This document shows, piece by piece, positions 25,657 through 62,819 of a DNA stretch of 64,000 nucleotides. Below the pieces are notes generated by a model, which ran no database searches, was not told where the DNA came from, and worked only from the letters and a program-made list of their open reading frames with translations. Location: positions 62,001-126,000 of IMG/VR virus record IMGVR_UViG_3300034158_000023. One strand, given 5' to 3'. Within the stretch, counting starts at the first letter, position 1; each line of letters starts with the position of its first letter. Made by a program: the position numbers and the translations under genes.

Positions 25657-25765
25657 TACCTGTCATATCTGTAGGAGGTAGCCCTCCTACATATGCCGTC
25701 TCCAATCATTTGTAAATATATATAGTCATTGTGTTATAGAAACATAAAACAAAAGGAAATATGTA

Positions 25766-51237: not shown

Positions 51238-51299
51238 TATCTCACATTAGGATGGGGACGTCCCCATCCTTCCTTATTCAGTTCACAGGAGGTTCGGCC

Positions 51300-51833
51300 A
51301 TGGATAAATCTATCCAAGTACTACAACACAATCTTGGCGTTGTAGCTAGACGGTTAGGCGTTAAAGTGCAATTGACTGATGAGTCAGTGGCTAGAGCTGA
51401 CAAGCTCGCTATTGGACATGGTCTCTTTAGTGGTAACCGGAGCACTGCATTTGCTCTGGTAGCACTAAAGGTACTGCAACATAAGTTCGGTGCTAAGTTA
51501 GGCTTCGCTGAGCTTAACATTGTACTGAAGAGCCTCGCAGCTGCGCACGATAAGTGTGTGCTGGGCGATGAAGCTTTCCGCACGGTGGTTATAACTCACA
51601 CCGTCAGCTTAAGTAAGATGCACAGTTTACCCCCTCTAGGGTTGACTGAAGCCATCATGCGAGCTGAGGATATCATTGAGGTGTGTAAGGTTTATCATGT
51701 TGCACGTGCAACAGAAAAGACCCCACCACATAAAGTTGGTGTAAGTTTAGCGCAAGCTATTCTAGCCACCATGCGTCCTAAAGTCCTGGGGTTACAGCCA
51801 GGACGCGTCGATGACGAGTTAGGGTACATGTAA
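51300..51833 (+). CDS. hypothetical protein
   Basis: ATG 51300 after AGGAGG; upstream hairpin 51249-51270. Confidence 0.75.
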   Translation: MDKSIQVLQHNLGVVARRLGVKVQLTDESVARADKLAIGHGLFSGNRSTAFALVALKVLQHKFGAKLGFAELNIVLKSLAAAHDKCVLGDEAFRTVVITHTVSLSKMHSLPPLGLTEAIMRAEDIIEVCKVYHVARATEKTPPHKVGVSLAQAILATMRPKVLGLQPGRVDDELGYM

Positions 51834-57545: not shown

Positions 57546-57891
57546 ATTTACTGAGGTGATACACCAACACAGCAGAAGATTAAACTCCGTAATAGATTTC
57601 ACTACACACATAGGTGAAATACTTCGAGGGGTGTTTGGCTTAGAACCAAGAGAAGGGTTACGAGATGGAGACTTTAAATACGATTTAGTCGCTATGGGAG
57701 TCCCTCCAGTAACAGCTGATTTAATCATCATCAGCCTGCTCAGGTTCTTAGAACATGCCCTAGTAGATCTACTGGAAGAAAAAGCCCACTATGATAATTA
57801 TAGTTGGGAATATCATAAAAGTGGAATTTTAGTTATTACGAGCGTGGAATATGAAAACAGCAGTGATAAACCTCAGAGAGCACTTAGTTAG
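57493..57891 (+). CDS. hypothetical protein
   Basis: 132-aa ORF in coupled cluster. Confidence 0.75.
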   Translation: MQQVKQQYVIPMDFYEIKFTEVIHQHSRRLNSVIDFTTHIGEILRGVFGLEPREGLRDGDFKYDLVAMGVPPVTADLIIISLLRFLEHALVDLLEEKAHYDNYSWEYHKSGILVITSVEYENSSDKPQRALS

Positions 57892-58255
57892 GTGCGTAGG
57901 TTTACCGCTGGTTAGTGAGGTACCACTAGCTTTATTACTTAAATACGTTTGCACTTATCACAGTTACTTAAACTTAAGTGCCGATGTAGAAATGGCGTTA
58001 GATCAGTTCCACAACTACTTAGAAGTAGAACTGTCTGCACCTGTTAGTAATAAAGTTAGTGCTCTATCCACCTATGCCGTCGGTAAGCCTGATAGCTTCG
58101 TCAGAGATGTCAGAGTCTCCGTGCAAGTGTTAGCCAATAGGTTATATCCTGCACTGGAACAACTGTGTGTAGCTTCAGAAACCCCTAACTGGATGATGAT
58201 AGATTTTGTAGATTTTAACGTAACCAGTTGTAGTTTAGTCGTGAGGGTGAACTAA
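57851..58255 (+). CDS. hypothetical protein
   Basis: 134-aa ORF in coupled cluster. Confidence 0.75.
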   Translation: MKTAVINLREHLVRCVGLPLVSEVPLALLLKYVCTYHSYLNLSADVEMALDQFHNYLEVELSAPVSNKVSALSTYAVGKPDSFVRDVRVSVQVLANRLYPALEQLCVASETPNWMMIDFVDFNVTSCSLVVRVN

Positions 58256-58707
58256 TGTATGAACATCCTATTTTTATCTTCCAGATACCTATACAAGATA
58301 AAACACCACGAATAGATATGCTTCTAAGCAGTCCGTATATAGACAGAGAGTATATGTTATTCTATGTTTGTTACCTGCACATGACAGTGTATCAACGACA
58401 ACAACCCCTCCATCCAACATTAGTGGACATCAGTGCTAATCTATGTGATGAGTTGATTCAACATGCTCCTCCACCTAATTTGTTTAACAGTACCTACGCA
58501 GATGAATATACTGTTGAGGTAGAATGTTATCAATTTTGGTTTAAGGTAGCGGAAAGGTTAACTGAAACTATCGAGGATGTTAGAGAACTAATAGCACACG
58601 AACTTGGTAGCATCCCTTTAGGAATAGACGAGACTCATGTAGTCGATAGAGCGTATATAACTAGAGGTATACTAAACGTGGTGTTTAAGATGGGAGCAGT
58701 TATGTGA
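58255..58707 (+). CDS. hypothetical protein
   Basis: 150-aa ORF, TAATG overlap. Confidence 0.75.
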   Translation: MYEHPIFIFQIPIQDKTPRIDMLLSSPYIDREYMLFYVCYLHMTVYQRQQPLHPTLVDISANLCDELIQHAPPPNLFNSTYADEYTVEVECYQFWFKVAERLTETIEDVRELIAHELGSIPLGIDETHVVDRAYITRGILNVVFKMGAVM

Positions 58708-59105
58708 GAACAGTCTTAACGTTTTCAGCTTTAGATTTATTCCTTGAGGTAGAGTGTCATCTACATTCAATGAACTACGTCAGGTACTCGGCGGATGATT
58801 TTATCCACCTAACTTTGATGTCATATGAACACGACACCATAAGAGAACTTGAAGACGGTGACGTGGAGACGTTAGTGGATAGTTTGTTTTTGAATGCTGA
58901 GGATTGTCGGAATCAGTATTCAGGGGAAGTGCCACTGTACGAAGATATATTCTTAACGTCCGTGTTGTTCTGTAAAGTTAGGGAAAGACTTAATTTTGAG
59001 TTACAGGCACTGAATGATCTTAATTACATTGAGTTCTATCAGGTGTTTGTAGGCAGAGCTCAAATCACAATTGTATATGAAGCTCCACGAGGTTTATATA
59101 GATGA
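58704..59105 (+). CDS. hypothetical protein
   Basis: 133-aa ORF, GTGA overlap, SD GGGAG. Confidence 0.75.
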   Translation: MRTVLTFSALDLFLEVECHLHSMNYVRYSADDFIHLTLMSYEHDTIRELEDGDVETLVDSLFLNAEDCRNQYSGEVPLYEDIFLTSVLFCKVRERLNFELQALNDLNYIEFYQVFVGRAQITIVYEAPRGLYR

Positions 59106-59539
59106 CAGATCAAGTAAAGGTGCATATCACTTATGTTAGACCAGTGAAAGAACCAGTGTATTATAATCATAACAGGAAAGACCGTTTTATTAACGCCCTC
59201 CCTACGAACATACAAGAAGTTCGTGTGATAGATAGGGACTATAGTCGTGAACTGTTCATGCGATTAGTCTACGTTATGCGGTATCAAAATGATCACGTGT
59301 ATACGGAGTTTATGGCACAGGCAGTTTGCGACTTGTTAAACCATTCTAGGGGGCTCAGTCCATATCAACTACAACGAGCTTTAGAAATTGATGACACCAC
59401 AACCCTAGAACTATTGGAAATCTTATACCAGTTTGAACGCGACGTAGTGTCTACATTTGCTCCTAACGTACCTTTACGTGATGTGATGTATTATATAGAT
59501 CCTACGACTAAAACCCTGTTAATTATTGTAAGGCGGTAA
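59102..59539 (+). CDS. hypothetical protein
   Basis: 145-aa ORF, ATGA overlap. Confidence 0.75.
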   Translation: MTDQVKVHITYVRPVKEPVYYNHNRKDRFINALPTNIQEVRVIDRDYSRELFMRLVYVMRYQNDHVYTEFMAQAVCDLLNHSRGLSPYQLQRALEIDDTTTLELLEILYQFERDVVSTFAPNVPLRDVMYYIDPTTKTLLIIVRR

Positions 59540-59542
59540 CAG

Positions 59543-59953
59543 ATGAGCGAATTATTAAAATTGGGCGACGTAGTAAACTTTGAAGTTTACCCTACAGCCG
59601 TATTGGGTAACGATTTCAAAAACATGACAGTAGCAGCTATCTTAGATGCTGAGACTGCTCGTACTGCAATGCCTGGGGGCTTTGATGCTCAAGCTATGCA
59701 TGCTAACGTCTACAACACGTTACCTGAAGGCACCCCTAACAACTACACTCGTTACAACTACGTTAAACTGAAGTACCCTAACGGTTCGATTCGTATTTTA
59801 GGTATCCCTTGGATTAAACCTGAGTCGATCGTATCTAAAGTGGTAAGTCGTGGCGTGTTTACGATTGATGCGATAGGAGCTGCTGATGTAGCTATCATCC
59901 AACAAGCGATTGCTGGTGCAGGCTACAAAGTCAAAGAGTACGTGCTCGAATAA
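59543..59953 (+). CDS. conserved phiKZ-like core protein (gp49-like)
   Basis: VNFEVYP..LG..F, GIPWI; position just upstream of DNA polymerase. Confidence 0.7.
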   Translation: MSELLKLGDVVNFEVYPTAVLGNDFKNMTVAAILDAETARTAMPGGFDAQAMHANVYNTLPEGTPNNYTRYNYVKLKYPNGSIRILGIPWIKPESIVSKVVSRGVFTIDAIGAADVAIIQQAIAGAGYKVKEYVLE

Positions 59954-60002
59954 TAAAATATTTGAAGTATGTATATTATAGGACGATGCAGGGAGGTTAC
60001 AA

Positions 60003-60344
60003 ATGTCATTACGAAGAGCGTTAGTTATTTGTAGTGTAGGCCTTGCTCTTATGGGCGGCTCTAGTTACAGTAAAGCTGAAATGGTCTCCTTATTACCTGA
60101 ATTAAAATGTTATGACCATCCAACGTTGTTAGGTCGTAAGAGTTCAGATACGTTTAAAGACATTGTGTTACCTAAAGTGACTTTGAATGTTAGACTAATA
60201 AGAAAGCCAGGGAATGAACGTAGTGCACCCCCTACATCTAAAGAGCTCACCGAAGAAACCCTTGATATAACTCAGCGATTCGCCTTAGCCGACAGTTTTG
60301 GGCTGTCTAAGCTGCGATGCATCCAGAGCTATCAAGACAGATGA
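60003..60344 (+). CDS. possible signal-peptide-bearing protein; may be spurious or dual-function within the structured RNA
   Basis: SD GGGAGG and hydrophobic N-terminus, but SD/ATG are buried in a predicted stem. Confidence 0.35.
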   Translation: MSLRRALVICSVGLALMGGSSYSKAEMVSLLPELKCYDHPTLLGRKSSDTFKDIVLPKVTLNVRLIRKPGNERSAPPTSKELTEETLDITQRFALADSFGLSKLRCIQSYQDR

Positions 60345-60485
60345 CTCATGGTGAGAGGGTGCTGTATAGACACTTGTCAGAGAGCTTTGTGTTCATAGCG
60401 AGCACAAAGACGGTACGAGTGTCTATATAGGATTTATTTCGTCCACGGTTGTTCTTCTCGTATATCGTAGGGTATGTACGAATAT

Positions 60486-60516
60486 AAGCAACAGGGTTTT
60501 CCTGTTGCTTTTTTTT
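60486..60516 (+). terminator. intrinsic terminator
   Basis: AAGCAACAGG-GTTTT-CCTGTTGCTT plus T tract. Confidence 0.85.
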
Positions 60517-60581
60517 GCCCGTTTTGAATTATAATTTACTATAACCCAGTATAAGTTGTAGGAACATTTGCGGAGTTACAG

Positions 60582-62819
60582 ATGACCAGTTACGACGATA
60601 CGATACCCAGTTACGATGAACTGCCAACAGTATGGCAGATTATGGGGACTGACCCTGTAATAGAAACAGTTAATCCATTTATAATGCCTGACAGCTACTA
60701 TGTGCGTGATCTTAACATGGTTGGTAGCGCAGTAGCACAGGCGGCTTTATATCTCTCTAAACGGACTGGAGACCCTATAGAGAAGTGTTTAACTTTCATT
60801 AAAGAGGAGATGAAACCTGGCGGTAAGTTTCCTTATAAAGATCCACGCATCCAGTATCTGGATTCTACTAATGAAGGTAACCGTACTTTAAAAGAAGGTA
60901 CGATGAGTGAGTTCTTATTAGAGGTCACTGAAAAGAAATACACCTTAGCTGCTAACTTAACAGCATATAACCATCCTGATGATAAAGAATCATTTACTGC
61001 TATGTATGCAGTAGGTGAGTATGCTAACCGTAAAGCCAACAAAGATAAACAACATCACTACGACCTGCTAGGCGACTCAGTGATGAAAGGTATCTACAAC
61101 AATCGCCAGAACCGTAACAAAATAAAACTAAACAGTATCTCTGGTGCCCACAACACAACCTCTAGCGCGTTATTCTGTCGTTCTACTCACAGTACTTTAA
61201 CTAGTACTACTCGTTGTGGTACTTCTAACACTAACGCTATGTTAGAACGTTTATTAGCAGGTAACAGACATTATTACGACTTAAATGCCGTACTGAATAA
61301 CATCACCAGTATTATCCACCTAGTGGACTTAGAGTTAGTTCAGAAAGCTATGGACGAGTATGGATTAGTTTATCCTACTACTGATGATTGTTTTAATGTA
61401 ATCAAACGTTCTACTGATTTATACTGGCAATGTAAAGATACCTCAGCAGAAACTGAGATTCGTGCCTTGTTAGATGCATTGACTCCAGTAGAAAGAGCAG
61501 CGTATCTTTATAACTGCGACATGCATTCACTGCGTACTTTAAACGATACGTTTGTACGCAGACTGTTTAAATCGTTATTAACCATTCCAGACAAAACTAG
61601 AATTCCATTTAAAGGGGATTGGATCAAACGTTTATCTGGTGATGATAAAGCTTTCATCAGTGTTAACGCATTCAACGTGTTAACTACAAGTAACCTGAAA
61701 GAAAGTACAGACGATGATAAAGAGATTGTAGACGCTAGCGGTTATGGTATCTATGCTACCTTTACTTACTTCGCTACGTTCTTCCAGGCGTTCTGGGTTA
61801 CTAAAGCTATGCCGTTTGAGATAGCTAGCTTCCCTGATTCTATACGACGTGTAAGTATCGCTTCTGATACTGACTCAGCTATCTTCACTAACCAAGATTG
61901 GGTAGAGTGGTACTTCGGTAAGATGAACTTTGGTCATGAAGGTTTGTGTATGGCTGCTGCGACTACTTATCTGTGTTCTCAAGTAGCTCAGCATGTGTTG
62001 GTACAGATGACTAGAAACTTTGGTTGTGCTGATAGACACATACGCGAATTCCAAATGAAGAACGAATTCTTGTTTAAGTTCTTCTCGTTGACCACGATGG
62101 CTAAACATTATTTTGCGGCTAAGCACACCTGTGAAGGTATCGTGTATGACGTACCAGACTGGGAGATTAAAGGTTCTAACTTAAAGAACACGAAAGCTAC
62201 AGCTGAGTTAATGGAAAGGTCTGATGGTCTCATTAAAGAAATAGCCCACAAAGTTATGGCTGGTGAGAAGATTCAACTGATTCCTATCCTTAAGGAGATT
62301 GCAGATAAAGAAACTGAGATCATCAACAGTATCAGGTCAGGTAGTACAGAGTTCTTTGCTACAGGACAGATTAAAGACTTTAACAGTTATAAGCAGAAAG
62401 AGAATGCTCCAGCTTGGCATAATTACTTACTGTGGTTAGAAGTCTTTGCTCCTAAGTATGGACAGACTCCTCCTCCAGCTTATACTGCTATTAAGGTTAA
62501 CATCGAGTGTGATACTGGCGGTAAGATGAGAGCGTGGTTTGATGACATGCCTGATCAAGAGTTAGCTACTCGTTTCCGTGAGTTTATGCTTAGGTATAAG
62601 AAAACTGCAATGACTGCGATTTGGTTACCTTCTGATCACGTTGGTGCTCACGGTATGCCAGATGAAATCATGATGGTTGTAAACGTACGTAAGATGATTA
62701 TCGGAATGATGAAGAGCTACTACTTGATCTTAGAGTCTCTAGGGTTCCATATCCTTAACTCTAACGATACAAGATTGATCTCTGATGACTTAGCTGGGTT
62801 TACTAAGAAAGCGGCATAA
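60582..62819 (+). CDS. DNA polymerase, family-B-like polymerase subunit (phiKZ gp50-like)
   Basis: KIKLNSISG, HSTLTS, SDTDS catalytic motif, KHY, EIKG. Confidence 0.88.
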   Translation: MTSYDDTIPSYDELPTVWQIMGTDPVIETVNPFIMPDSYYVRDLNMVGSAVAQAALYLSKRTGDPIEKCLTFIKEEMKPGGKFPYKDPRIQYLDSTNEGNRTLKEGTMSEFLLEVTEKKYTLAANLTAYNHPDDKESFTAMYAVGEYANRKANKDKQHHYDLLGDSVMKGIYNNRQNRNKIKLNSISGAHNTTSSALFCRSTHSTLTSTTRCGTSNTNAMLERLLAGNRHYYDLNAVLNNITSIIHLVDLELVQKAMDEYGLVYPTTDDCFNVIKRSTDLYWQCKDTSAETEIRALLDALTPVERAAYLYNCDMHSLRTLNDTFVRRLFKSLLTIPDKTRIPFKGDWIKRLSGDDKAFISVNAFNVLTTSNLKESTDDDKEIVDASGYGIYATFTYFATFFQAFWVTKAMPFEIASFPDSIRRVSIASDTDSAIFTNQDWVEWYFGKMNFGHEGLCMAAATTYLCSQVAQHVLVQMTRNFGCADRHIREFQMKNEFLFKFFSLTTMAKHYFAAKHTCEGIVYDVPDWEIKGSNLKNTKATAELMERSDGLIKEIAHKVMAGEKIQLIPILKEIADKETEIINSIRSGSTEFFATGQIKDFNSYKQKENAPAWHNYLLWLEVFAPKYGQTPPPAYTAIKVNIECDTGGKMRAWFDDMPDQELATRFREFMLRYKKTAMTAIWLPSDHVGAHGMPDEIMMVVNVRKMIIGMMKSYYLILESLGFHILNSNDTRLISDDLAGFTKKAA

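What the first reader, a model, noticed from the sequence alone, without database searches (positions are those of the whole stretch)
59981..60444. Large closed multi-domain RNA hidden under a weak ORF upstream of DNA polymerase
Seen: right after TATATTATA, GGACGA (59981-86) pairs with TCGTCC (60439-44) and encloses five nearly abutting domains. D1: GCAGGG/CCTTGC + TTACAAATG/TATTTGTAG (59988-60046). D2: TCTTATGG/TCGTAAGA + ATGGTC/GACCAT (60047-60141). D3: TACGTTT/GAACGTA + GACATT/AATGTT + GTTAC/GTGAC (60149-60222). D4: GCACCC/GGGTGC + CTCACC/GGTGAG + CTTGATA/TATCAAG + GACAG/CTGTC (60225-60362). D5: a 16-bp plus 10-bp rod (60362-60430). Departures from Watson-Crick pairing in these stems are G-U, which supports + strand RNA structure. 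The SD and ATG of the 113-aa ORF are buried in D1. No tRNA-like, tmRNA, RNase P or group I core recognised. Inference: a new large phage ncRNA, or a dual-function RNA.
Basis: partly seen in the sequence, partly recalled or inferred. Interest (0 to 1): 0.87.

Follow-up and report, generated by a model that had tools for sequence, protein, structure and literature searches.

The report
Small phage gene with structured tail
The proposed 464-base closed RNA is really a small, fast-evolving membrane-protein gene followed by a conserved 160-230 base folded RNA tail ending in a terminator just upstream of a jumbo phage's DNA polymerase gene; the tail is real and unclassified, and the five-domain RNA is not supported.

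Summary
The window is an uncultivated phiKZ-like (chimallivirus) jumbo phage. Region 59981-60344 (D1 to most of D4) folds no better than shuffles (z -1.46). Region 60345-60520 gives z -6.5 and is among the most stable stretches of the 64 kb.

Relatives recovered from public assemblies show three things.
- The 113-codon ORF is a real gene. It stays open in three lineages whose DNA has diverged about 60%, always with a Shine-Dalgarno site, an ATG and a basic-plus-hydrophobic N-terminus.
- The closing helix and D1, D2, D3, D4a and D4c are not conserved, and substitutions break them.
- D4d, the D5 rod, a further hairpin (60458-60481) and an intrinsic terminator (60486-60516) are conserved and covary: 14 pairs changed on both sides against about 4 in shuffles. 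This stretch diverges 0-21% where neighbouring synonymous sites diverge 45-70%.

Best reading: a promoter-to-terminator unit inserted between the SH3DP and DNA polymerase genes. It encodes an orphan signal-anchored protein and carries a conserved structured 3' UTR. Whether that tail acts in cis or as an sRNA is undecided. Moderately interesting, and a new member of a known kind.

The parts
59543..59953 (+). Upstream neighbour: SH3DP gene (SH3-fold protein associated with phage DNA polymerases)
   Evidence: Pfam PF20287, E 4e-35. Substitutions sit at third codon positions, 2/6/44 against L007.
59970..59983 (+). Promoter-like AT-rich motif (TGTATATTATAGGA), a degenerate copy of this phage's recurring early-type motif. 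The transcript start is inferred at about 59981-59987.
   Evidence: The motif TATATATTAC-N4-GT(G/A) recurs 40-60 nt upstream of at least 8 genes, usually just after a terminator. ATATTATAGGAC is identical in L008/L009 and L010. Jumbo-phage early promoters are roughly 10-nt AT-rich motifs centred near -10 (PMC7598289). No transcript data exist, so this is inferred.
59988..60046 (+).
   Evidence: A comparable hairpin occluding the SD and AUG appears in the separate folds of the window, L007, L008 and L010, but each is weak, z -1.0 to -1.8. Aligned pairs are not conserved. Inconclusive.
60003..60344 (+). CDS of a 113-aa orphan protein with a basic-plus-hydrophobic N-terminus (signal peptide or anchor) and the motif PGNxRxAPPTxKELTEE. 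In this genome the C-terminus is frameshifted.
   Evidence: The ORF is open in the window type (113 aa), L007 (102), L008/L009 (101) and L010 (97); chance per lineage is 0.0005-0.0017. A hydrophobic segment lies at residues 6-24 in all. There are no other relatives among 1.84 billion representatives and no Pfam or PHROG hit. AlphaFold2 gives pLDDT 44, with only the N-terminal helix formed.
60273..60310 (+). Frameshift zone and ancestral stop. The window type lacks 1 nt (between 60287 and 60288) relative to L008/L009. L007 carries a compensating +1 (between 60272 and 60273). The ancestral stop TAA is at 60308-60310.
   Evidence: The C-terminus RQFWAV-stop is shared by L007 and L008/L009 (KWFWVT in L010), and is readable in another frame of the window.
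60291..60307 (+).
   Evidence: L010 has AGTGG/TCACT in the same columns: 5 of 5 pairs kept, 4 of them changed on both sides.
60359..60433 (+).
   Evidence: Window against L008 shows U-A>C-G twice, and C-G>U-A with U.G as the intermediate state in L003 and L007. With L010 added, 9 of 18 outer-stem pairs changed on both sides and 96% of cells are paired. The apical 3 pairs of the inner stem are not conserved.
60434..60457 (+). Linker left unpaired in the consensus fold, pyrimidine-rich (contains GTTCTTC)
Evidence: It differs at 4 of 25 positions from L008, against 45-57% synonymous codon change in the adjacent genes. GUUCUUC recurs in L010 and UCUUCU in L012, read by eye.
60458..60481 (+).
   Evidence: It is in the alignment consensus fold. 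It differs at 1 of 24 positions from L008. L010 keeps it with 2 pairs changed on both sides.
60486..60516 (+). Intrinsic terminator: 10-11 bp stem plus a T8 tract
   Evidence: Found by the terminator scan. It is identical in L008 (0 of 37 differences). L010 has two A-U>G-C double changes.
60582..62819 (+). Downstream neighbour: divergent family B DNA polymerase
   Evidence: Pfam PF20286, E 1e-216. It is under 40% identical to the polymerase of any deposited phage; all best hits are chimalliviruses.

Best explanation
The interval is a self-contained transcription unit of about 535 nt, inserted between the SH3DP and DNA polymerase genes of a phiKZ-like jumbo phage. An early-type promoter motif at 59970-59983 would start an mRNA near 59981. 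It encodes a small, rapidly evolving, signal-anchored orphan protein (60003-60344).

Downstream lies a conserved structured 3' region: hairpin A at the ancestral stop, a 26-bp interrupted rod, a conserved linker that the consensus fold leaves unpaired, a second hairpin, and an intrinsic terminator at 60486-60516.

Shown by comparison: the ORF is maintained, the 3' hairpins covary on the + strand, and the 3' module is under much stronger purifying selection than the coding part.

Inferred: the module acts at the RNA level. My committed mechanism is a cis-acting 3'-end module. It stops the early transcript before the polymerase gene. Through the rod (which has the geometry of an RNase III-type substrate) and the terminal hairpins it sets the processing and stability of the mRNA, and it is recognised by a sequence-specific partner, given the conserved loops and linker.

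The descriptive part I hold at about 0.85, the cis mechanism at about 0.4. A trans-acting sRNA released from the same 3' end is nearly as likely.
For: Coding:
- The ORF is open in three lineages whose N-terminal halves differ at about 62% of bases. The chance of staying open is 0.0005-0.0017 per lineage.
- SD and ATG are present in all, and a hydrophobic segment at residues 6-24 in all.
- The shared motif PGNxRxAPPTxKELTEE shows 12 synonymous against 15 non-synonymous codon changes.
- L007 carries a compensating frameshift that restores the RQFWAV C-terminus.

Structure:
- z is -6.54 for 60345-60520 against -1.46 for 59981-60344.
- The 3' windows rank 2, 4 and 8 of 1276.
- The consensus fold has four helices.
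- A covariance model built from close relatives finds the L010 module at 60 bits, E 2e-15.
- On that alignment 95.3% of cells are paired, and 14 pairs changed on both sides against 4.2 +/- 1.6 in shuffles and 1-2 in slid controls.
- Hairpin A is fully compensated in L010.

Selection: window against L008, the rod differs 21%, linker 16%, HP2 4% and terminator 0%. Synonymous codon change is 45-57% in the flanking codons, and four-fold sites differ 50-70%.

Strand: G-U pairs and G-U intermediates occur, and the - strand scores 22.7 bits against 193.

Insertion-like nature: relatives at the same junction have spacers of about 180-200 nt with no ORF (L013, L017, L018).

Promoter and terminator: and PMC7598289.
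Against: - There is no transcript, probing or translation data, because the phage is uncultivated.
- Only five distinct haplotype groups exist, and the covariation count was made on an alignment fitted to the model.
- Among close haplotypes the ORF shows no codon periodicity (10/10/13 and 9/4/11 by codon position; 9 synonymous against 19 non-synonymous codons) and evolves at about the local neutral rate. In this genome its C-terminus is frameshifted, so the protein may be under relaxed selection here.
- The promoter motif is a degenerate copy of the consensus and lacks the usual GT(G/A) downstream.
- Conserved loops and the conserved linker are more than a plain stability element needs, which favours the sRNA rival.
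- The apical pairs of the inner rod stem and of HP2 are not conserved.
Confidence: 0.55

Rival explanations
1. The 3' module (about 160-230 nt, from hairpin A or the rod to the terminator) is released or accumulates as a trans-acting small RNA. The unit would then be a dual-function RNA, like 3'UTR-derived sRNAs that share the terminator of their parent mRNA. The conserved unpaired linker or the loops would be the seed.
For: - The architecture is stem-loop, single-stranded conserved stretch, hairpin, terminator with a U tail.
- Unpaired parts are conserved far above the neutral expectation.
- The module is more conserved than the CDS.
- L012, which has no ORF at this junction, still shows rod, CU-rich stretch, hairpin and terminator in a module of similar length, 163 nt.
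- sRNAs conserved by position are reported in phiKZ and 201phi2-1 (PMC11512511).
Against: - No internal promoter motif lies upstream of the rod.
- No processing site can be called.
- A duplex scan of the linker against the 64 kb and against the polymerase and own translation start regions gave nothing beyond background: -14 to -16 kcal/mol against a background of -11.1 +/- 3.5.
- The host is unknown, so host targets cannot be tested.
- Linker sequence is largely not conserved in L010.
Confidence: 0.28
2. The module is a cis-regulatory leader or attenuator of the DNA polymerase gene. Transcripts reading in from upstream either terminate at 60516 or read through, and the rod, linker and HP2 are the sensor for a protein, possibly the polymerase or SH3DP itself.
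For: - The module always sits 60-90 nt upstream of the polymerase ATG (window 65 nt, L010 72 nt, L012 86 nt), and is still there when the ORF is absent (L012).
- Spacers at this junction in L012 and Burkholderia phage FLC9 are long, have no annotated or called gene, and are strongly structured, z -5.35 and -4.25.
- Most sRNAs of 201phi2-1 arise by premature termination in 5' UTRs.
- From general knowledge, T4 and RB69 DNA polymerases repress their own translation through an RNA operator.
Against: - No alternative (antiterminator) pairing is evident.
- A conserved stretch between terminator and ATG (TGTAG, 25-30 nt before the ATG in all four lineages) suggests the polymerase has its own promoter.
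- Many chimalliviruses have only 40-180 nt at this junction.
- The terminator is strong (11 bp plus T8).
Confidence: 0.12
3. One reading: one closed non-coding RNA of about 464 nt with five domains, with the ORF spurious or incidental.
For: All the helices exist in the window, and the whole interval gives z -3.77. Among close haplotypes the ORF lacks codon periodicity and carries a frameshift. One compensatory change occurs in D2b of L007.
Against: - Region 59981-60344 has z -1.46.
- In L008/L009 and L010 the closing helix keeps 4/6 and 2/6 pairs, D1a 2/6 and 1/6, D2a 4/8 and 0/8, D3a 2/7 and 1/7, D4a 3/6 and 3/6, and D4c is deleted.
- Among close haplotypes, changed pair states are 9 kept against 9 broken.
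- The closing helix is absent from the window's own full-transcript fold.
- The ORF is retained in all lineages.
- There is no Rfam hit.
Confidence: 0.04
4. The conserved inverted repeats act at the DNA level, as a protein-binding site, an origin or a cruciform, rather than in RNA.
For: Long inverted repeats next to the replication genes. Sequence conservation includes the loops.
Against: Invariant and transitional G-U pairs would be C-A mismatches on the other strand. Folding is strand-asymmetric, z -3.77 against -1.6, and the model scores 193 against 22.7 bits. The last hairpin is a canonical terminator with a T tract on the coding strand.
Confidence: 0.03

Closest known systems
3'UTR-derived and dual-function bacterial sRNAs (for example CpxQ, DapZ, MicL; SgrS/SgrT, RNAIII/hld) - from general knowledge
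   Same: A single short transcript combines a translated ORF with a structured RNA part that ends in the mRNA's own intrinsic terminator. The 3' part is more conserved than the coding part. There is a conserved unpaired stretch between hairpins.
   Different: No processed species, chaperone binding or target is known here. The ORF is 100-113 codons with a signal anchor, longer than most small proteins of dual-function RNAs. It is phage-encoded in a nucleus-forming jumbo phage.
Phage morons (extra genes with their own promoter and terminator inserted between conserved genes) - from general knowledge
   Same: There is a promoter-like motif, a single small gene for a membrane or secreted protein, and a terminator. 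The unit sits between two functionally linked conserved genes (SH3DP and the polymerase), which in relatives lie about 40-200 nt apart.
   Different: This is a lytic jumbo phage with its own RNA polymerases rather than a temperate phage using host sigma-70. The 3' structured module may predate the ORF (L012, L017/L018).
sRNAs of chimalliviruses mapped by ONT-cappable-seq (phiKZ, 201phi2-1; PMC11512511)
   Same: Short terminator-bounded RNAs in intergenic or UTR positions of phiKZ-like phages, conserved by position next to a conserved gene, with a conserved predicted fold.
   Different: Those are under 250 nt, mostly 5'UTR-derived, and the conserved example lies upstream of a tail gene. None is reported at the SH3DP/polymerase junction in the passages retrieved. 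No sequence comparison could be made.
RNase III processing hairpins of T7 early mRNAs and the lambda sib retroregulator - from general knowledge
   Same: An irregular hairpin of about 26 bp with an internal loop, lying in a 3' or intergenic position of a phage transcript.
   Different: Cleavage is untested. Whether the unknown host's RNase III reaches these transcripts is also unknown.
Large ornate phage-associated ncRNAs (GOLLD, ROOL) and hok-type mRNAs closed by 5'-3' pairing
   Different: No Rfam model matches. The multi-domain part neither covaries nor folds better than shuffles. The 5'-3' closure is not conserved.

Membership tests
   The ORF with SD and ATG is retained in three diverged lineages, P about 0.001 each.
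   The closing helix, D1, D2, D3, D4a and D4c are not conserved. Changed pair states are 9 kept against 9 broken among close haplotypes. Only D4d and D5 covary.
   Rfam 15: nothing at gathering score in the 64 kb. In the region the best match is ncS54 at 25.1 bits against a cut-off of 43, over the stretch just before and including the terminator, 60446-60516.
Protein-coding gene | Open frame, start codon and ribosome-binding site kept in diverged homologues | tested here: met
Protein-coding gene | Substitutions concentrated at third codon positions (purifying selection on the protein) | tested here: inconclusive
   By codon position, 10/10/13 and 9/4/11 among close haplotypes, against 26/12/158 in the polymerase. 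In the conserved motif against L009, 11/11/20, with 12 synonymous and 15 non-synonymous changes.
Intrinsic (rho-independent) terminator | GC-rich stem-loop followed by a T tract on the transcribed strand, kept in homologues | tested here: met
   Region 60486-60510 plus T8. It is identical in L008 and has two compensated pairs in L010.
3'UTR-derived / dual-function sRNA | Conserved structured 3' part that shares the mRNA terminator and has a conserved unpaired segment | tested here: met
3'UTR-derived / dual-function sRNA | A discrete stable 3' RNA species and a base-pairing target | not testable with these tools
   No transcriptome exists for this uncultivated phage. An in-window duplex scan was uninformative.
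Moron-like inserted transcription unit | Own promoter and own terminator flanking a single accessory gene | tested here: inconclusive
   The terminator criterion is met. The promoter is only a degenerate match to the phage's recurring motif, though it is conserved in relatives.
Moron-like inserted transcription unit | Gene absent from the same junction in related genomes | tested here: met
   L013 (pEa_SNUABM_54), L017 and L018 have 180-200 nt spacers with no ORF, and L012 has 485 nt with no gene called. The protein family is confined to three lineages.
RNase III processing site | About 20 bp or more of irregular double-stranded RNA with an internal loop | tested here: met
   A 16-18 bp stem plus a 7-10 bp stem separated by an internal loop. 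Cleavage itself is not testable here.

The most novel reading that the evidence does not exclude
The rod, linker, hairpin and terminator module may be one member of a wider, undescribed class of structured RNAs placed directly upstream of the divergent family B DNA polymerase gene in a branch of chimalliviruses. The ORF-less, strongly structured spacers of L012 (z -5.35) and Burkholderia phage FLC9 (z -4.25), and the three-hairpin spacers of L017/L018 that share CGUAUAGAU with the rod, would belong to it. It would act as a regulatory RNA, either a trans sRNA or a polymerase-sensing leader, tied to replication. In the window's clade a small membrane-protein gene was inserted in front of it and now uses its terminator.
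Probability: 0.2. Interest if true: 0.65.

Novelty: new member of a known kind. Interest (0 to 1): 0.38.

Why it matters
Nucleus-forming jumbo phages run their own transcription, and only a few of their regulatory RNAs are known, all from cultured Pseudomonas phages. A covarying RNA module under strong selection next to the replicative polymerase gene is a concrete candidate for such regulation in an uncultivated lineage, and it is short enough to test on a plasmid. The case is also a caution. A long ORF-bearing stretch can give an impressive whole-region z-score and a hand-drawn closed fold when all the signal comes from one 3' hairpin cluster. Conversely, shallow comparisons can make a real but fast-evolving gene look non-coding.

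Tried and rejected
- Rfam at permissive E-value over 59500-60900 and at gathering score over the whole window: nothing.
- tRNA/tmRNA scan: none.
- blastn and tblastn of the junction and the ORF against 50,697 phage records: no match.
- IMG/VR scans with the ORF, SH3DP and a 24-nt 3'UTR word: only the source contig itself.
- The metagenome scan gave only relatives about 40% identical. Relatives of L018 in IMG/VR all had an identical SH3DP protein.
- Pfam and PHROGs for the ORF: nothing credible. The Rz-like spanin hit for L010 has E 0.18 and was ignored.
- Profile search of 1.84 billion representatives: only the three known lineages.
- AlphaFold2: pLDDT 44, so no fold search was run.
- Linker-to-target duplex scan: not above background.
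- Covariance model search of distant loci: L012, L017 and L018 give weak hits (E 0.03-0.2 over 39 kb) inside the SH3DP-polymerase spacer. I treat these as suggestive only, because any terminator attracts part of the model.
- Hok-like type I toxin mRNA was considered because of the end-to-end closure and small hydrophobic protein. I rejected it: the closure is not conserved, the protein is twice the usual size, and the only minus-strand sigma-70-like site points away from the ORF.
- A recent recombination tract as the cause of the 3' conservation was rejected: the flanking codons differ synonymously at 45-57% between the window and L008.
- Blastn with the FLC9 and L012 spacers against the phage records found no relatives.
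Full report
**Context.** The window is part of IMGVR_UViG_3300034158_000023, a 215-kb contig. The finding lies between a gene for the SH3-fold protein associated with phage DNA polymerases (PF20287, 59543-59953) and a divergent family B DNA polymerase (PF20286, 60582-62819). The polymerase is under 40% identical to that of any deposited phage, and all best hits are phiKZ-like jumbo phages. A relative's contig also carries tubulin-like and chimallin genes nearby. This is therefore an uncultivated chimallivirus.

**The observation.**
- The whole interval folds with z -3.77 on the + strand and -1.6 on the - strand.
- Split in two, 59981-60344 gives z -1.46 and 60345-60520 gives z -6.54.
- In a 200-nt sliding scan of the 64 kb, regressed on GC, windows 60251-60550 rank 2, 4 and 8 of 1276. 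Windows over D1-D3 and most of D4 are ordinary or worse than average.
- When the transcript is folded to its terminator, the closing helix drops out of the window's own minimum-energy structure. TCGTCC then pairs locally near 60350-60357.

**Relatives.** Nothing similar exists in deposited phages or IMG/VR. Protein look-ups in public assemblies gave:
- a near-identical group (L003-L006 and L020, about 95% DNA identity to the window over the spacer);
- L007 (92%);
- L008/L009 (65%);
- L010/L011 (48%);
- more distant loci with SH3DP 40-47% identical (L012, L016-L018).

**The ORF is a gene.**
- In all three deep lineages an ORF of 97-113 codons follows the same conserved leader, with a Shine-Dalgarno site and an ATG.
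- The first 200 bases of the coding part differ at about 62% of positions between lineages.
- Base-shuffled versions of each coding sequence stay open only 0.05-0.17% of the time.
- All versions start with basic residues followed by a hydrophobic segment at residues 6-24.
- The window type and L009 share the motif PGNxRxAPPTxKELTEE, with many synonymous differences.
- L007, L008/L009 and L010 end in RQFWAV or KWFWVT at a TAA that corresponds to window 60308-60310. The window, L003 and L020 lack one base (between 60287 and 60288) and so read a different, longer tail. L007 shares that deletion but has gained a base 15 nt upstream (between 60272 and 60273), which restores the old tail.
- The protein has no relatives outside these lineages among 1.84 billion representatives, no Pfam or PHROG family, and no confident predicted fold.

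Among the close haplotypes substitutions are spread evenly over codon positions (10/10/13 and 9/4/11) and occur at about the local neutral rate. This explains why the ORF looked weak. The protein evolves very fast, and in this genome it may be under relaxed selection.

**The five-domain RNA is not conserved.** Read down the alignment, pairs kept in L008/L009 and in L010 are:

| Helix | L008/L009 | L010 |
|---|---|---|
| Closing helix | 4/6 | 2/6 |
| D1a | 2/6 | 1/6 |
| D1b | 5/9 | 5/9 |
| D2a | 4/8 | 0/8 |
| D2b | 1/6 | 3/6 |
| D3a | 2/7 | 1/7 |
| D3b | 2/6 | 0/6 |
| D4a | 3/6 | 3/6 |

D4c falls in a deletion. D4b is invariant in the window type and L008/L009 (uninformative there) and keeps only 2/6 pairs in L010. 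Among the near-identical haplotypes, changed pair states in these helices are 9 kept and 9 broken. I judge that to be about what unconstrained substitution would give; no null was computed. Separate folds of each lineage do show a 5' hairpin covering the SD and AUG, but each is weak, z -1.0 to -1.8. I leave D1 as inconclusive.

**The 3' module is real.**
- Hairpin A (D4d, 60291-60307) is fully compensated in L010, with four of its five pairs changed on both sides.
- The D5 outer stem shows, between the window and L008, two U-A to C-G exchanges. It also shows a C-G to U-A exchange whose U.G intermediate is present in L003 and L007, plus wobble shifts.
- A covariance model built from the close sequences finds the L010 module at 60 bits, E 2e-15.
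- On the resulting alignment 95.3% of cells are paired. Fourteen pairs changed on both sides, against 4.2 +/- 1.6 in shuffles and 1-2 when partners are slid. The caveat is that this alignment is fitted to the model and holds only six distinct sequences.
- The consensus comprises the rod (60359-60433), a linker it leaves unpaired (60434-60457), HP2 (60458-60481) and an intrinsic terminator (60486-60516).
- Between the window and L008 these parts differ by 21%, 16%, 4% and 0%.
- By comparison, codons with unchanged amino acids differ synonymously at 45-57% in the directly adjacent parts of SH3DP and the polymerase, and four-fold sites differ 50-70%. This excludes a recent recombination tract and shows strong selection on loops and linker as well as stems.
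- G-U pairs and the strand asymmetry place the structure in + strand RNA.

**Transcription signals.** An AT-rich motif, TATATATTAC followed four bases later by GT(G/A), recurs 40-60 nt upstream of at least eight genes, typically just after a terminator. This fits the published description of jumbo-phage early promoters (PMC7598289). The copy at 59970-59983 is degenerate, but ATATTATAGGAC is identical in all three lineages. The transcript would then run from about 59981 to 60516, roughly 535 nt. This is inferred, not shown.

**Wider picture.** At the same junction other chimalliviruses have 40-250 nt and no ORF.
- L017/L018 have about 195 nt with three hairpins, the first sharing CGUAUAGAU with the rod.
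- L012 has 485 nt with no gene called there; a mechanical listing shows only one 74-codon frame, lying over its rod-to-terminator stretch. It folds with z -5.35 and carries a module of 163 nt with rod, CU-rich stretch, hairpin and terminator.
- Burkholderia phage FLC9 has an unannotated 536-nt spacer with z -4.25.

These similarities are weak (model E 0.03-0.2) and I could not find relatives to test them. They suggest, but do not show, that the RNA module is older than the ORF, and that the ORF with its promoter was inserted in front of it.

**Mechanism.**
- Shown: a maintained coding frame, a covarying and selected 3' RNA structure, and a canonical terminator.
- Inferred and committed (about 0.4): the module works in cis as the 3'-end element of an early transcript. 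It terminates transcription ahead of the polymerase gene and controls processing and stability. The rod has the geometry of an RNase III-type substrate, and a sequence-specific partner would explain the conserved loops.
- Nearly as likely (about 0.28): the module accumulates as a 3'UTR-derived sRNA, which would make this a dual-function RNA.
- Less likely (about 0.12): a leader or attenuator for the polymerase gene.

A scan for targets of the linker gave nothing above background.

**Verdict.** What is there is an orphan small-protein gene with a conserved, unclassified structured 3' UTR in an uncultivated jumbo phage. It is a new member of a known kind, of moderate interest.

Noticed in passing
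window 51330-51600 (+): This is the most stable 200-nt stretch of the whole window (GC-regressed z -3.9, rank 1 of 1276). The 271-nt stretch folds with z -4.80, with 0 of 200 shuffles as good. It lies inside ORF 51252-51833 (193 aa, no Pfam hit).
   Followed up: partly
window 1831, 7373, 12980, 18113, 20446, 23450, 25710-25725, 50647 (+): There is a recurrent promoter-like motif TATATATTAC-N4-GT(G/A), usually just downstream of a terminator hairpin and 40-60 nt upstream of a gene. Most genes also share the leader AATAAAAGGA just before the ATG, which ORF 60003 and the polymerase gene lack.
   Followed up: partly
L012 5397-5880; L014 (Burkholderia phage FLC9) 1965-2500: The SH3DP-to-polymerase spacers of two distant relatives are long (485 and 536 nt), have no called or annotated gene, and are strongly structured on the + strand (z -5.35 and -4.25). 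L012 carries a 163-nt arrangement of rod, CU-rich stretch, hairpin and terminator, like the window's module.
   Followed up: partly
L017 3264-3457; L018 3894-4090: These short spacers (about 195 nt) at the same junction hold three hairpins ending in a terminator. The first hairpin shares CGUAUAGAU...CUUGC with the 5' arm of the window clade's rod. Model R2 aligns all three hairpins, but at only 11-14 bits.
   Followed up: partly
window 57851-62819 against L003: Divergence is mosaic. The genes from 58255 through SH3DP are 0-3% different at third codon positions between the window and L003 (57851-58255, only partly covered, is 8%), while the ORF is 7% different overall and the polymerase about 10% different at third positions. 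Against L007 the first 100 polymerase codons are also less diverged than the rest. This suggests recombination breakpoints near the SH3DP/ORF junction.
   Followed up: partly
window 60272-60310: Paired frameshifts occur in the ORF's C-terminal region. A 1-nt loss is shared by the window type and L007, and it is compensated in L007 alone by a 1-nt gain 15 nt upstream, which restores the C-terminus RQFWAV found in L008/L009.
   Followed up: yes
window 60002-59975 (-): There is a sigma-70-like promoter match on the minus strand (TTGTAA-16-TATAAT, 10 of 12). It is the reverse reading of the same AT-rich motif and points away from the ORF, into the 3' end of SH3DP.
   Followed up: no
window 60552-60556 and the equivalent positions in L008, L010 and L012: The pentamer TGTAG lies 25-30 nt upstream of the polymerase ATG in all four lineages, despite otherwise diverged spacers. 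It may be part of the polymerase gene's own promoter or start site.
   Followed up: no
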